A DNA stretch of 64,000 bases. Origin: Antechinus flavipes. Its lineage: Eukaryota. The first letter of the stretch is position 1. Every line of letters starts with the position of its first letter. Below, in pieces: positions 58,762-63,040 of the stretch. The notes under the pieces are model-generated. The model saw only the letters and a list, made by a program, of their open reading frames with translations, ran no database searches and was not told the DNA's origin. The position numbers were made by a program, and so were the translations under genes. Location of the stretch: positions 63,922,001 to 63,986,000 of the forward strand of contig NC_067400.1 of the NCBI RefSeq assembly GCF_016432865.1. The letters are read 5' to 3'.

Positions 58762-61260
58762 ATGGAAGAACTGGAACAGGGTCTGCTGACCCAACCATGG
58801 GCCTGGCTGCAGCTTTCAGAGGACTCCCTTCTGGCCAAGGCCTGCATCCTGACGGACAAGGGCTATGCCATTCTTCTCTCTGACCTCCAGCATGTGTGGC
58901 ACGAGCAAGTGGACACGAGGGTGGTCAGCCAGAGGGCCAAGGTAAATGTGGGGGGTAGGAATGGCAGAAGGCAGTGTGCTCTCCACCCGGTAAAGCCCAG
59001 GAGGACACACCCCCAAATTAGGGCTTTTGGAATGGAAGAATTAGTGGAACATAATAGAAAGGACCCAGCGCTGGAAACCAAGACATTTGGGACTAGCTTT
59101 GTCCCTTTAGACAAAGCATTTAATTTGGGGGGGGGGTCTGTTTCCTCAGCTAGAAAATGAGAAGACTGGATCACCTGAGTTTCAGCTAAAAGCCTCTTCT
59201 GTCATTGAAATTCTATTTGCAATAATTCAGAGTGAACATTCTTTCGCTTTGACATTAAAGGCTCTGTGCATCCTTTTGCAGTGGGGTCTGATATTATTTA
59301 CCTTCCCATAGGCTACACTTTTGCCAAATTGGTCCTTAGGATCAAGTATTGAATCCCATCTCTGCCTTCTGCATACATGTAACTTTGGGTCTGAAACACT
59401 TCTGGGCTTCAGGTTCCTCAACTTTACAATGGGAGCTTGACTTCTATGCCTTTCATCTCCATATCGGTAGTTCTGTAATGTCCCTGAATTTTTCTGCCTC
59501 CTTGGATTTGCTTACAATGTTCCTCCTGCCAGAAAGGTCATCTCTTTCCGCCTTCCATTTGTAAAATTACCTACCCATGCCTTAAAGCACAGATAAAATG
59601 CCACCTTCCTTCCCCATGAGGGTCTGCTCTGGTCTCCCCAGTTAACAATGATCGTTGCAAGACATTAAACATTTATTAAATGCCATTGGATGCAAAGCAC
59701 TGTATTCCCAGTGAAGGGTAAAAAAGTGAAACAAAATCATTTCTTCTCAGTGAATTTATATTCCTCTGAGAAGACAAAATATGCACATTTAATTGTTTAT
59801 ATTTTTTCTCCCCCATCCTCTAGTAGAATCTGAGAGGAGTTGGGGAGATGAGGGACAGCTTTCTGGAGAAGTTAGCACCTGGTGTAAGTCTTAAAGGATG
59901 ATAAGGATTCTGAAAAGGAGAACATGCTGTTTTTTGGGGAGATTCTGAAAATAGCTATGATTGTCCACTTTGGCTGGAGTATGAAGCATATGAAGGGGCT
60001 TTTTAATGTGAAATAAAGTCAAAAGTTAAGGTTGGAAGCTGTCTAGAGATTATGGAGGATATTAAAAGTCAGTTTCCATTTTATCCTAGAGACCATTATA
60101 CAGAGGCACTGAGGATTTTGGAGAAGATCAGATCTCTGCCTTAGGAATATAATTTTGGAAGAAGTATGGGGTATGGATTAGAGGGAGAGACATCAATTAG
60201 GTGTTGTCCGAGCAAGAAGAGATGAGGAACCAGGCATGTGAATAGAGAGAAGGGGACATATATCTTGTGAGAGAAGTTTTTGATAGGATTTAATCATTTG
60301 TTGTCAGTCAGGTAAAAGGGAAAGCGAAGGATTCAAGAATGACTGAGATTACTATCCTGGGTGCCTTAAGAGGATGAAGGTCTCTTCAATACATTTATGG
60401 AAGTTTGAAATTAGGTTTTAGGGAAGAAGATGAAGCAGGCTGTCTTGAATGTTAAATTTGAAATCATCTTAAACATTCAGATGGAAATGACTAGCAGACA
60501 ATTTAATGATCTAGGACTTCATTTCAGAGTTGGATACATAGATTTTGGAGTCATCTGCATACATAATAATTGGGAACTAGCTCATGAAGCAACAGAGAAA
60601 AGGATCTAGGACTGATCTTTGGAAAATACCTGTATTTAGGGAAGTAAGAGATAGAGGATGATCCAGTAAGGAAGACTGGGAAAATCATTCAGTTGAATAG
60701 AGGAAAGTCATGGAAACCAGTGAATATCCAGGAGTAAGACATGATCAGCAACATAAAACATGAGAAAAATCTATCACATCAATATAGTTGAGGTCTTTAG
60801 TAATGGAGCAATTTCAATTAGTGTGGACTGATCTCCTAATGGTGGGATCAAATGCTACAGGGAAAGGGGCTGAAAAATGAGTTGGTGGTGAAATGAATGG
60901 GTGAAAACTAATTACCCCCAAACACTAAGGACAATCATAAGAATAAAAATGACCACCTTATTAGATTTGGAGCATTGTCTTAGGCTACTCTGTTCTGCTC
61001 TTGAAGGACATTCTGCAATCTCTGCCTCTCTTCTGGTATTCTTACAGGAGCTAAATCGGCGACTGACTGCAACTCCTTCTGCCTTCCTCTCCCACTTGAG
61101 AGACCTCATATGCACCTTGTTAGAAGGTTCGGCCGATCCCAAGGGGGCCATTTTCTCTTGTGAGCGTTTGCCAGATGGATTGACAGTGCGTGTTCGAAGT
61201 GAGCTCTCTGGTCTACCTTTTCACTGGTACTTCCAATGTGCCTTGGCCAGCCCTTCCATG
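58762..61260 (+). CDS. NHEJ1: Non-homologous end-joining factor 1 (XLF/Cernunnos), partial: first two coding exons
   Basis: Exons 58762-58941 ([18 protein letters not shown]...VVSQRAK) and 61048-61260 (ELNRRLTA...[12 protein letters not shown]...SPSM). The gene continues beyond the window. Confidence 0.95.
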
Positions 61261-61433
61261 GTGAGTGGGGAATGGCCTCATTAGGCCCTTTTTAATCTAT
61301 AGAATTCTTTTCTTGTTGGAGGAAGAGATTTTTTTTATGGTGAAAAAAAATCAGAAATATTGTTCTTTTACTTCTCTAAAACTCTTTTCCCCTAGAAGCC
61401 TTCAGGCTAGGAAAGAGGCAGACTTGAATTTTT

Positions 61434-62100
61434 TTTTTTAAACTTAACTACCACTTTATTTTAGAGGATAATTTAGCTTATAAATTATCATGCATTTGGT
61501 CCCTAAAATCCAATTCAATGGAATAATACATAAGTACAAAAAGATGAAACAATTCTTTCTTTTAAATACTCTGTACATATAAAATTAACTTTATACCAAG
61601 ATGTAAATCAAACATGAGAAATTTGAGGGGACTGTGTAGATATTGCTAAGTTTTCCACTTTTGGTACAAAATGGAATTTCTCATTTAGAGCCCCCAAATA
61701 GAGGGAGATCCTAAAAATGTATCAGACATACTTGTACACACTGGGTTTCAGTAATCTAGTTTGTATAGAAATGTTTCCATTAAATTCATATAGTCGATTT
61801 TAGAAGGAGGGACTTTTCACTTAGTCATCTGTCTAACCATCTGTCACTCTTTAACAGGCTCCCATATTTGGTAAATTGTGAAAAATTTTTGAGGCAGGTC
61901 AGTCGTCATATTTTCTCATGGTTCTACATTTTTCTTTCTGTTAATAATCACATCAATTTTGAAAAGGGAATAATATGGACATGTAGGCTGCTCTAAATCT
62001 GGTGAAACTCATGAATGTGATCAAAGGAACAAGTTCTTTCTTTTTCATTATAAATTGTAAGATATTCACGATTGCAACTTTTTGAGCTGGTACATGAGAG
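61434..62100 (-). pseudogene. C15orf48: Processed pseudogene of C15orf48 (NMES1/COXFA4L3)
   Basis: Intronless CDS remnant at 62069-61817: VNILQFIMKKKELVPLITFM.../KIDVIINRKKNVEP*ENMTTDLPQKFFTIYQIWEPVKE*QMVRQMTK*, aligning to recalled human [20 protein letters not shown]...[53 protein letters not shown] (-) at 61455-61460, poly(A) (T-run 61429-61439), imperfect TSD at 61420-61433 / 62101-62114. Confidence 0.9.
61710..61790 (-). ncRNA. mir-147-derived hairpin remnant inside the C15orf48 retrocopy (function unknown)
   Basis: Minus strand TATGAATTTAATGGAAACATTTCTATACAAACTAGATTACTGAAACCCAGTGTGTACAAGTATGTCTGATACATTTTTAGG aligns along its full length with recalled human pre-miR-147b. Confidence 0.75.
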
Positions 62101-62874
62101 AGACTTGATTCTTTCAACCTTTCCCCTTCAAAGGGAACTTGAGTTAGGTAGTTAGAATGCATTTCCACAGCTTTTTAAGGTTCACAAAGCCCATGCCATT
62201 TGTTGGCTCACTTCACAACAGCCCTGAGAGTAGATGCCATTAATCTGTAGATGGCGAACCTGAGACTGAGTTGGGATGCTTGAGAGCTAGTAAATGTCTG
62301 AGGCTGGATCTCCAGCCCAGCCCTCCGGCCTGCACACCTTAGCTTTCAGTGAAACTGGGAAATCAGCGGCGTGCATAGTCCTTTCCCTCGTGCACATTGC
62401 CAGCTGTGAATTTTCATCCTGCGCCATCCTTGTCAGTGTTATTTTCCCCTAGAATACCTTCCCAGAGGGCTCGGTGGGGCAATGGATGCAGATCTGGGAT
62501 TAGGAAGACCTGAAGTTGAATCAAGACTCAAACATCCTGGCCAGGTCATGGGAGCAGTAACTGCCCCTTCTGCCCAGGCCTGTGGTGAGAATCCAGCGAG
62601 ATAATAACTGTAAGGTGCTTATTACAGAAGATGCTTGGTAAATACCTCCTCCCTCTCCTCAGAGAACTTCAGCCGTCCATTTTGTATCACTTGTTTGTGC
62701 CCCATCACTGGCTCGCTCCCTTTTCTCCTATCTCCTCAGCGCTTCCGGGACATTTGAAGTATACCACATGCTACATGGACATATAGATAATAGGCAGCAT
62801 CCTTTCTATGTGTGCGGATAGAGAAGGCTGCACCCAAACACATAGATGGTGCAATTCACTGACAGGCCACGAGG

Positions 62875-63040
62875 AGGCAGAAAGACTGACCTTCACGAAT
62901 TCAAATGATTTAACTCTGCCTTAGTTTCCTCAATGAATTGGAGAAGGAAATGGCAAATCACTCCCCTATCTTTGCCCAGAAAACTCCAAAGGGGATCACA
63001 GAGAGTTGGACCCAGCTGACACGACTAAACAACAAAAATT
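62875..63040 (+). mobile_element. Mar1-like SINE
   Basis: CORE followed by the RTE-type tail ggagaaggaaatggcaaatcactcc...gagttggac...gactaaacaacaa. Confidence 0.75.

What the first reader, a model, noticed from the sequence alone, without database searches (positions are those of the whole stretch)
61710..61790. Retroposed miR-147 hairpin: 5p seed intact, 3p seed rewritten - candidate new miRNA paralog
Seen: minus-strand 5p arm TGGAAACATTTCTATACAAACT (61758-61779) keeps the seed GGAAACA of recalled miR-147b-5p with only 2 substitutions. The 3p arm GTGTGTACAAGTATGTCTGATA (61720-61741) differs from GTGTGCGGAAATGCTTCTGCTA, changing the seed to TGTGTAC. Both stem ends still pair (e.g. UAUACA/UGUGUA), but the middle has mismatches and a bulge. 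Inference: miRNA duplication by retroposition of a dual peptide/miRNA transcript. If transcribed, it could yield a novel-seed miRNA or an antisense RNA to NHEJ1 pre-mRNA; decay is the default explanation.
Basis: partly seen in the sequence, partly recalled or inferred. Interest (0 to 1): 0.7.

Follow-up and report, generated by a model that had tools for sequence, protein, structure and literature searches.

The report
Decayed miR-147 relic in retrocopy
The stretch is a real but mutationally dead copy of the miR-147 hairpin, carried in the 3'UTR of an old processed pseudogene of C15orf48/NMES1 that lies antisense in an NHEJ1 intron; it no longer folds as a microRNA precursor, so it is an ordinary relic.

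Summary
The minus strand at 61712-61790 is homologous to the mir-147 precursor (Rfam RF00693, 51.9 bits, E 2.4e-10, below the gathering score of 57).

The hairpin lies 27 nt after the stop codon of an intronless, polyadenylated C15orf48/NMES1 retrocopy (61429-62095, minus) flanked by target-site duplications. The retrocopy is antisense in an NHEJ1 intron.

The reading "candidate new miRNA" is not supported:
- **Folding:** the hairpin in the family register is worth only -2.8 kcal/mol. The MFE is -9.9 (z +0.48) and does not pair the arms; summed probability of the 28 family pairs is 0.04-0.29. The family consensus folds at -30.8 (z -7.1).
- **Neutral decay fits:** placing the same number of random substitutions on the consensus reproduces the observed pairs kept, the hairpin energy and the intact 5p seed.
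- **The coding part is dead too:** the start codon is lost, and there is a frameshift and premature stops.
- **Expression:** RNA contigs of a relative show only thin, scattered, boundary-crossing coverage and none over the hairpin.

Small-RNA data could not be examined. Verdict: neutral relic, a new member of a known kind, low interest. The scan had already noted the retrocopy on this same window (s1-183221).

The parts
62096..62114 (-). 5' target-site duplication of the retrocopy (core 62096-62109)
   Evidence: Direct repeat D2, 79% over 19 nt with 61415-61433. The core TCAAGTCT..CTC directly abuts the retrocopy's first base.
61429..62095 (-). Processed pseudogene (retrocopy) of C15orf48/NMES1: 5'UTR remnant, broken coding region, 3'UTR and poly(A)
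   Evidence: Collinear and intronless, bounded by the target-site duplications. Two B12D-family pieces lie in two frames. A mir-147 hit follows the stop codon.
61817..62069 (-). Coding remnant. GTG at 62067-62069 stands where the start codon should be. A frameshift lies between about 61972 and 61999. Premature stops are at 61916-61918 and 61844-61846. The original stop is at 61817-61819.
   Evidence: Translations. Pfam B12D (PF06522) profile positions 1-23 match in one frame (E 0.16) and positions 26-44 in another (E 0.076), both below the cut-off. The assignment of the start codon rests on my recall of the human protein.
61712..61790 (-). Decayed mir-147 precursor homolog
   Evidence: Rfam RF00693 gives 51.9 bits (gathering score 57), E 2.4e-10. 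It has 18 differences in 79 columns from the family consensus. The family-register energy is -2.8 kcal/mol. The MFE is -9.9, z +0.48.
61758..61779 (-). Former 5p arm (2 changes, seed GGAAACA intact)
61720..61741 (-). Former 3p arm (8 changes including seed positions 6-8; the functional guide strand of the parent)
   Evidence: PMC8035321 names miR-147b-3p as the mature functional strand.
61455..61460 (-). AATAAA polyadenylation signal, 15 nt before the A tail
   Evidence: Read directly.
61429..61439 (-). Poly(A) tail remnant (11 A)
   Evidence: Read directly.
61415..61433 (-). 3' target-site duplication (core 61415-61428)
   Evidence: repeat D2.
61009..61266 (+). NHEJ1 (XLF) coding exon, which fixes the host gene's strand. 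The retrocopy lies in the following intron, antisense.
   Evidence: ORF 60901..61284. Pfam XLF N-terminal domain, E 1.1e-4. PDB human NHEJ1 chains, E 5e-24, aligned to residues 46-132.

Best explanation
An mRNA of C15orf48/NMES1, which carries the miR-147 hairpin in its 3'UTR, escaped Drosha cleavage. The L1 machinery reverse-transcribed it and inserted it antisense into an NHEJ1 intron. The copy brought no promoter and has since drifted neutrally. The coding frame is broken. The hairpin has taken about 23% substitutions, including CpG decay in the 3p seed, and can no longer form the roughly 30-bp stem that Drosha and DGCR8 need. The insertion and the present state are shown. Absence of selection and of processing is inferred. 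The stretch is a non-functional relic and not a new miRNA gene.
For: Retrocopy hallmarks: an AATAAA signal, an 11-A tail and flanking direct repeats 61415-61433 and 62096-62114. It is intronless, with the 5'UTR, B12D-type coding remnant, stop codon and mir-147 hit in one line. The parent's architecture, with miR-147b in the C15ORF48 3'UTR, is documented in PMC8035321. Dead coding part: GTG in place of the start codon, a frameshift and two premature stops. Dead hairpin: the Rfam score is below the gathering score (51.9 against 57). The family-register energy is -2.8 kcal/mol, against -28.5 for the consensus. The MFE is -9.9, z +0.48, with 135 of 200 shuffles folding as well, against -30.8, z -7.1 for the consensus. 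The summed probability of the 28 family pairs is 0.04-0.29, with or without flanks. Neutral model: 17 random substitutions on the consensus keep 21.6 +/- 1.8 pairs (24 or more in 14% of runs). They give a hairpin energy of -3.7 +/- 6.9 (the observed -2.8 is near the median) and an MFE of -16.9 +/- 5.1 (97% of runs are more stable than the observed -8.9). The 5p seed stays intact in 16% of runs. The 2-against-8 arm asymmetry has Fisher p 0.07. Paralog contigs differ from the window copy by 17% over the hairpin segment 61667-61794 and by 13-21% over the coding segments, so the hairpin is not better kept. RNA contigs of a relative are thin (word depth about 3), scattered over the flanks as well, and cross the retrocopy's 5' boundary (61940-62210). 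None covers the hairpin from the orthologous locus.
Against: No small-RNA library could be examined, so rare processing is not excluded. Contigs cannot show absence, strand or level. The 5p arm is well kept (2 of 22 changed) and one pair changed on both sides in a compensatory way (G-C to A-U), although both fall within the neutral simulation. The plus strand folds somewhat better than chance (-17.4 kcal/mol, z -2.43). The orthologs in two close relatives show no change inside the hairpin, but only about one change was expected, so this carries no information.
Confidence: 0.9

Rival explanations
1. The retroposed hairpin is transcribed on the minus strand and still processed, giving a miR-147-5p-like RNA and a new-seed 3p RNA. 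That would make it a young miRNA paralog.
For: Homology to mir-147 over the full model. The 5p seed is intact and 24 of 28 pairs are nominally standard pairs. A low-depth RNA contig of a relative reaches from the flank into the retrocopy's 5' part.
Against: The arms do not pair in the thermodynamic ensemble. The energy is no better than that of randomly mutated consensus hairpins. A retrocopy has no promoter of its own. No RNA contig covers the hairpin. The functional 3p guide strand is the more damaged arm.
Confidence: 0.03
2. The plus strand, which is the NHEJ1 pre-mRNA, uses the mirror-image hairpin as an intronic miRNA precursor, or its near-perfect complement to miR-147-5p (20 of 22) as a nuclear target or decoy site.
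For: The plus strand folds at -17.4 kcal/mol, z -2.43, with 4 of 200 shuffles as good. It is certainly transcribed, as part of the NHEJ1 intron.
Against: A stem of 21 interrupted pairs at -17.4 kcal/mol is well short of the family consensus at -30.8. The fold is not the mirror of the miR-147 register: about 2 of 28 mirror pairs by probability. Rfam gives 17.3 bits and E 5 on this strand. Intronic target sites are removed with the intron, and 5p is not the strand reported as functional.
Confidence: 0.03
3. A minus-strand transcript of the retrocopy acts as a long antisense RNA to the NHEJ1 pre-mRNA, or as a decoy for factors that bind the C15orf48 mRNA.
For: The retrocopy is antisense in the intron. 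Pan and Lin (PMC7692494) raise this as a theoretical possibility for intronic antisense miRNA retrocopies.
Against: No strand-resolved evidence of transcription. The coverage seen is thin, patchy and continuous with the intron flanks, as expected of pre-mRNA or carried-over DNA. The same paper classes all its miRNA retrocopies as pseudogenes.
Confidence: 0.04

Closest known systems
mir-147 / miR-147b precursor in the 3'UTR of C15orf48 (NMES1, MOCCI, MISTRAV); Rfam RF00693
   Same: Full-length homology to the precursor model, the same position just after the stop codon of a B12D-family small ORF, and the same 5p seed.
   Different: The score is below the family's gathering score. Four stem pairs are broken and most G-C pairs are lost. 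The energy is -2.8 against -28.5 kcal/mol. The 3p guide, reported as identical in all 22 nt from human to spotted gar (PMC7793259), has 8 changes here. The host ORF is broken and there is no promoter.
L1-mediated microRNA retrocopies (mir-302a, mir-373, mir-498; Pan and Lin 2020, PMC7692494)
   Same: A miRNA hairpin copied through a polyadenylated transcript, with a poly(A) tail and target-site duplications. Those copies also carry mutations, lack expression evidence and are regarded as pseudogenes.
   Different: The parent here is a protein-coding mRNA with an exonic (3'UTR) hairpin, not a non-coding host transcript. mir-147 is not among the cases in that paper's main text.
Ordinary processed pseudogenes of protein-coding genes
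   Same: Intronless, with a poly(A) tail, target-site duplications and a disabled frame, and inserted in an intron of an unrelated gene.
   Different: Nothing essential. The only special point is that this parental mRNA happens to carry a miRNA hairpin.
Primate miRNAs lying in processed pseudogenes (miR-220, miR-492; Devor 2006, recalled from memory and not checked here)
   Same: They show that a processed pseudogene can in principle host a miRNA.
   Different: Those hairpins were reported as expressed miRNAs. This one does not fold.

Membership tests
mir-147 miRNA precursor (Rfam RF00693) | Covariance-model score at or above the curated gathering score (57 bits) | tested here: not met
   51.9 bits, E 2.4e-10. 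No hit appears in the gathering-threshold scan of the window. It is homologous but below the membership line.
mir-147 miRNA precursor (Rfam RF00693) | Stable stem-loop that pairs the 5p and 3p arms | tested here: not met
   The family register is worth -2.8 kcal/mol. The MFE of -9.9 (z +0.48) does not pair the arms. Pair-probability sum is 0.04-0.29 of 28. The consensus control folds at -30.8, z -7.1.
mir-147 miRNA precursor (Rfam RF00693) | Conserved miR-147(b)-3p guide and seed | tested here: not met
   8 of 22 positions differ, including seed positions 6-8. The parent's 22 nt are reported identical from human to gar (PMC7793259).
mir-147 miRNA precursor (Rfam RF00693) | Small RNAs of about 22 nt with uniform 5' ends from both arms | not testable with these tools
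   The single run search returned no small-RNA library, and Logan contigs (31-letter words) cannot hold 22-nt reads.
L1-mediated processed pseudogene / retrocopy | 3' poly(A) tract preceded by a polyadenylation signal | tested here: met
   AATAAA at 61455-61460 and 11 A at 61429-61439 on the minus strand.
L1-mediated processed pseudogene / retrocopy | Target-site duplications at both ends | tested here: met
   61415-61433 against 62096-62114, 79% over 19 nt, abutting the tail and the first base. Short two-copy repeats can arise by chance, but this placement is exact.
L1-mediated processed pseudogene / retrocopy | Intronless copy of a spliced parent | tested here: inconclusive
   The 5'UTR, coding remnant and 3'UTR are contiguous in 667 nt. 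That the parent is a multi-exon gene rests on general knowledge of C15orf48. The parental locus of this genome was not available.
L1-mediated processed pseudogene / retrocopy | Disabling mutations (pseudogene, not retrogene) | tested here: met
   GTG in place of the start codon, a frameshift, and stops at 61916-61918 and 61844-61846.
C15orf48/NMES1 (B12D family, PF06522) as parent | B12D-type ORF followed by mir-147 in the 3'UTR | tested here: met
   Two collinear pieces match B12D profile positions 1-23 and 26-44, at weak E-values (0.16 and 0.076) below the cut-off. mir-147 starts 27 nt after the stop codon. This architecture is described for C15ORF48 in PMC8035321.

The most novel reading that the evidence does not exclude
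Retroposition of the C15orf48 mRNA has seeded several miR-147-like hairpins in this lineage. At least one of them yields a small RNA with a rewritten 3p seed, which would be a case of miRNA birth by retroposition of a dual peptide/miRNA transcript. The candidates are this copy or, more plausibly, the better-kept copy seen at word depth about 50 in a relative's RNA.
Probability: 0.03. Interest if true: 0.5.

Novelty: new member of a known kind. Interest (0 to 1): 0.1.

Why it matters
It matters little for function: this is a decaying by-product of retroposition. It has modest value as a documented example that an mRNA with an exonic miRNA hairpin can escape Drosha cleavage, be retroposed whole, and then lose its hairpin at the neutral rate. 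It is also a caution for annotation. Homology searches with mir-147 will hit such relics (51.9 bits here), and they should not be called miRNA genes. Reads from the parent or from other copies can cross-map onto them.

Tried and rejected
1. A new miRNA on the minus strand: rejected on folding and on the neutral simulation.
2. A mirror-image hairpin on the plus strand: weak, in a different register, and without Rfam support.
3. Using paralog contigs as 'the parent' to date the copy: dropped. The reads tool silently removes contigs that match human DNA, so the ultraconserved true parent may be hidden, and the contigs seen may be other retrocopies.
4. Conservation in the two close relatives: not informative, because only about one change was expected in 79 nt.
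5. Literature on the origin of miR-147a, or on a known C15orf48 retrocopy carrying mir-147: nothing relevant found. PMC7793259 contains nothing on retrocopies of this gene.
6. The large protein searches were not spent, because the Pfam, PDB and Rfam results settled the identities.
7. One search was a malformed search term and was corrected.

Operator notes were kept.

Full report
**Observation**

- 61758-61779 is TGGAAACATTTCTATACAAACT.
- 61720-61741 is GTGTGTACAAGTATGTCTGATA.
- An Rfam scan of 60500-63000 gives mir-147 (RF00693) at 61712-61790 on the minus strand. It covers model positions 1-78 of 78, with 51.9 bits and E 2.4e-10.
- That score is below the family's gathering score of 57, so the window-wide gathering scan lists nothing.
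- The 5p arm occurs once in the window at up to 3 mismatches, against 0 expected.
- Against the family consensus the stretch has 18 differences in 79 columns. Two are in the 5p arm and eight in the 3p arm, including seed positions 6-8.

The homology is real and the description is accurate.

**Surroundings**

The hairpin is part of a processed pseudogene on the minus strand. Reading 5' to 3' on that strand:
- A direct repeat lies at 62096-62114.
- A 26-nt leader follows.
- GTG at 62067-62069 stands where I recall the parental start codon to be.
- A coding remnant follows, and it needs two reading frames. One frame reads ..IMKKKELVPLITFMSFT.. and the other reads ..YSLFKIDVIINRKKNVEP*ENMTTDLPQKFFTIYQIWEPVKE*QMVRQMTK*.
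- The original stop codon is at 61817-61819.
- The mir-147 homolog starts 27 nt after that stop codon.
- AATAAA lies at 61455-61460, followed by eleven A at 61429-61439.
- The second copy of the direct repeat is at 61415-61433 (family D2).

The two coding pieces hit Pfam B12D (PF06522) at profile positions 1-23 and 26-44. The E-values are weak (0.16 and 0.076), but the pieces are collinear. A B12D-type small ORF with miR-147b in its 3'UTR is the published architecture of C15ORF48/MOCCI (PMC8035321). The parent is therefore C15orf48/NMES1.

On the plus strand, ORF 60901..61284 holds an NHEJ1 exon. It matches the Pfam XLF N-terminal domain and human NHEJ1 chains in the PDB at E 5e-24 over residues 46-132. 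That alignment shows many amino-acid differences, so the genome is not human.

**Does it still fold?**

| Sequence | MFE (kcal/mol) | z-score | Energy in family register (kcal/mol) |
|---|---|---|---|
| Window copy, minus strand, 81 nt | -9.9 | +0.48 | -2.8 |
| Rfam consensus (parental proxy) | -30.8 | -7.1 | -28.5 |
| Window copy, plus strand | -17.4 | -2.43 | not in the mirror register |

- On the minus strand, 135 of 200 shuffles fold at least as well, and the predicted structure does not pair the two arms.
- Forcing the Rfam register keeps 24 of 28 pairs as standard pairs.
- The summed probability of the 28 family pairs is 0.29 without flanks, and 0.04-0.08 with 20-100 nt of flank.
- The consensus folds into the expected hairpin, so the method recovers a working precursor.
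- The plus-strand fold is a 21-pair interrupted stem. About 2 of 28 mirror pairs carry probability, and Rfam gives it 17.3 bits, E 5.

**Is the pattern more than neutral decay?**

I put 17 random substitutions (13 transitions and 4 transversions, as observed) on the consensus 3,000 times.

| Measure | Simulated (mean +/- sd) | Observed | Where the observed value falls |
|---|---|---|---|
| Family pairs kept | 21.6 +/- 1.8 | 24 | reached in 14% of runs |
| Family-register energy (kcal/mol) | -3.7 +/- 6.9 | -2.8 | near the median |
| MFE (kcal/mol) | -16.9 +/- 5.1 | -8.9 | 97% of runs are more stable |

- An intact 5p seed occurs in 16% of runs.
- The 2-against-8 arm asymmetry gives Fisher p 0.07, and two of the eight 3p changes are at the arm's CpG.
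- Pairs survive nominally because half of all transitions turn a Watson-Crick pair into a wobble.
- The single compensatory-looking pair (G-C to A-U) is within this expectation.

**Reads**

It also returned six runs of unrecorded type from organisms B, C and D, holding 65-95%. I laid X1, X2, X7 and X8 on 61290-62800 at 80% likeness.
- **Orthologs.** X7 and X8 each hold the whole stretch in one contig, with 14 and 19 substitutions. The retrocopy is therefore shared with these close relatives. No listed substitution of these two contigs falls in the hairpin (77 differences were not shown), but only about one was expected there.
- **Paralogs.** Both runs also hold three or four paralogous contigs over 61667-62082. 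These differ from the window by 17% over the hairpin segment and by 13-21% over the coding segments. Two of them are collinear across the coding region and 3'UTR, so they are further intronless copies.
- **RNA contigs of organism A.** They are 92-98% like the window and have word depth of about 3. They lie on both flanks (61290-61448, 62246-62716) and across the retrocopy's 5' boundary (61940-62210). None covers 61494-61646, or the hairpin, from the orthologous locus. This is what intronic pre-mRNA or carried-over DNA looks like. It is not a transcript of the retrocopy's own.
- **A separate 624-nt RNA contig.** It has depth 50.7 and matches only 61744-61788. It continues into a 3p arm that is nearer the consensus but still altered in the seed, so it belongs to a different copy.

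Contigs cannot show strand, ends or absence. The tool also removes contigs that match human DNA, which may hide the ultraconserved parent. I therefore did not use the paralogs for dating.

**Mechanism**

- **Shown:** an intronless, polyadenylated C15orf48 copy flanked by target-site duplications, with a broken ORF and a hairpin that no longer folds.
- **Inferred:** a full-length mRNA that escaped Drosha cleavage was retroposed by L1 into the NHEJ1 intron in antisense orientation. It had no promoter and has drifted since.

The 23% divergence of the arms from an ancestor that the literature calls invariant across vertebrates (PMC7793259) argues for an old insertion. So does the presence of the copy in a relative that is 3-7% diverged. 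I estimate tens of millions of years, which is a rough inference.

**Comparison with what is known**

L1-mediated miRNA retrocopies are described for mir-302a, mir-373 and mir-498, and are classed as pseudogenes for the same reasons (PMC7692494). Searches found nothing on a mir-147 retrocopy or on the origin of miR-147a. The present case is a new member of that known kind. Its small distinction is that the parent is a coding mRNA with an exonic hairpin. It fails three defining tests of the mir-147 family (gathering score, stable hairpin, conserved 3p guide), so I do not file it as a miRNA gene.

**Verdict**

The retroposition origin is supported. The candidate new miRNA is not supported, and neutral decay fits every measure. 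Small-RNA data remain the one untested line. Interest is low. Operator notes were followed, as listed under Tried and rejected.

Noticed in passing
window 61744-61788 (RNA run X2, record 10): A 624-nt RNA contig of a related organism, at word depth 50.7, matches only the loop and 5p arm (5 differences in 45). It continues into a 3p arm nearer the mir-147 consensus but with an altered seed (GUGUGCAAAAUUGC...). This is another C15orf48-like copy present in RNA. It is not the canonical parent if the 22 nt are as invariant as reported.
   Followed up: no
window 61667-62082 (runs X7 and X8): Three to four further paralogous contigs, 13-21% different from the window. Two are collinear across the coding region and 3'UTR, so they are further intronless copies. 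One form skips 61741-61846. C15orf48 seems to have been retroposed several times in this lineage.
   Followed up: partly
window 62157-62207 and 62463-62640: Many-contig depth and many loose ends in the DNA-like runs suggest interspersed repeats beside the retrocopy. Close relatives carry a 21-nt insertion behind 62468 and 5 nt behind 62337.
   Followed up: no
window 61710-61790, plus strand: The NHEJ1-sense strand folds into a modest hairpin (-17.4 kcal/mol, z -2.43) that is not the mirror of the miR-147 register. It also carries a 20-of-22 complement to the miR-147-5p sequence inside the intron.
   Followed up: partly
   Followed up: no
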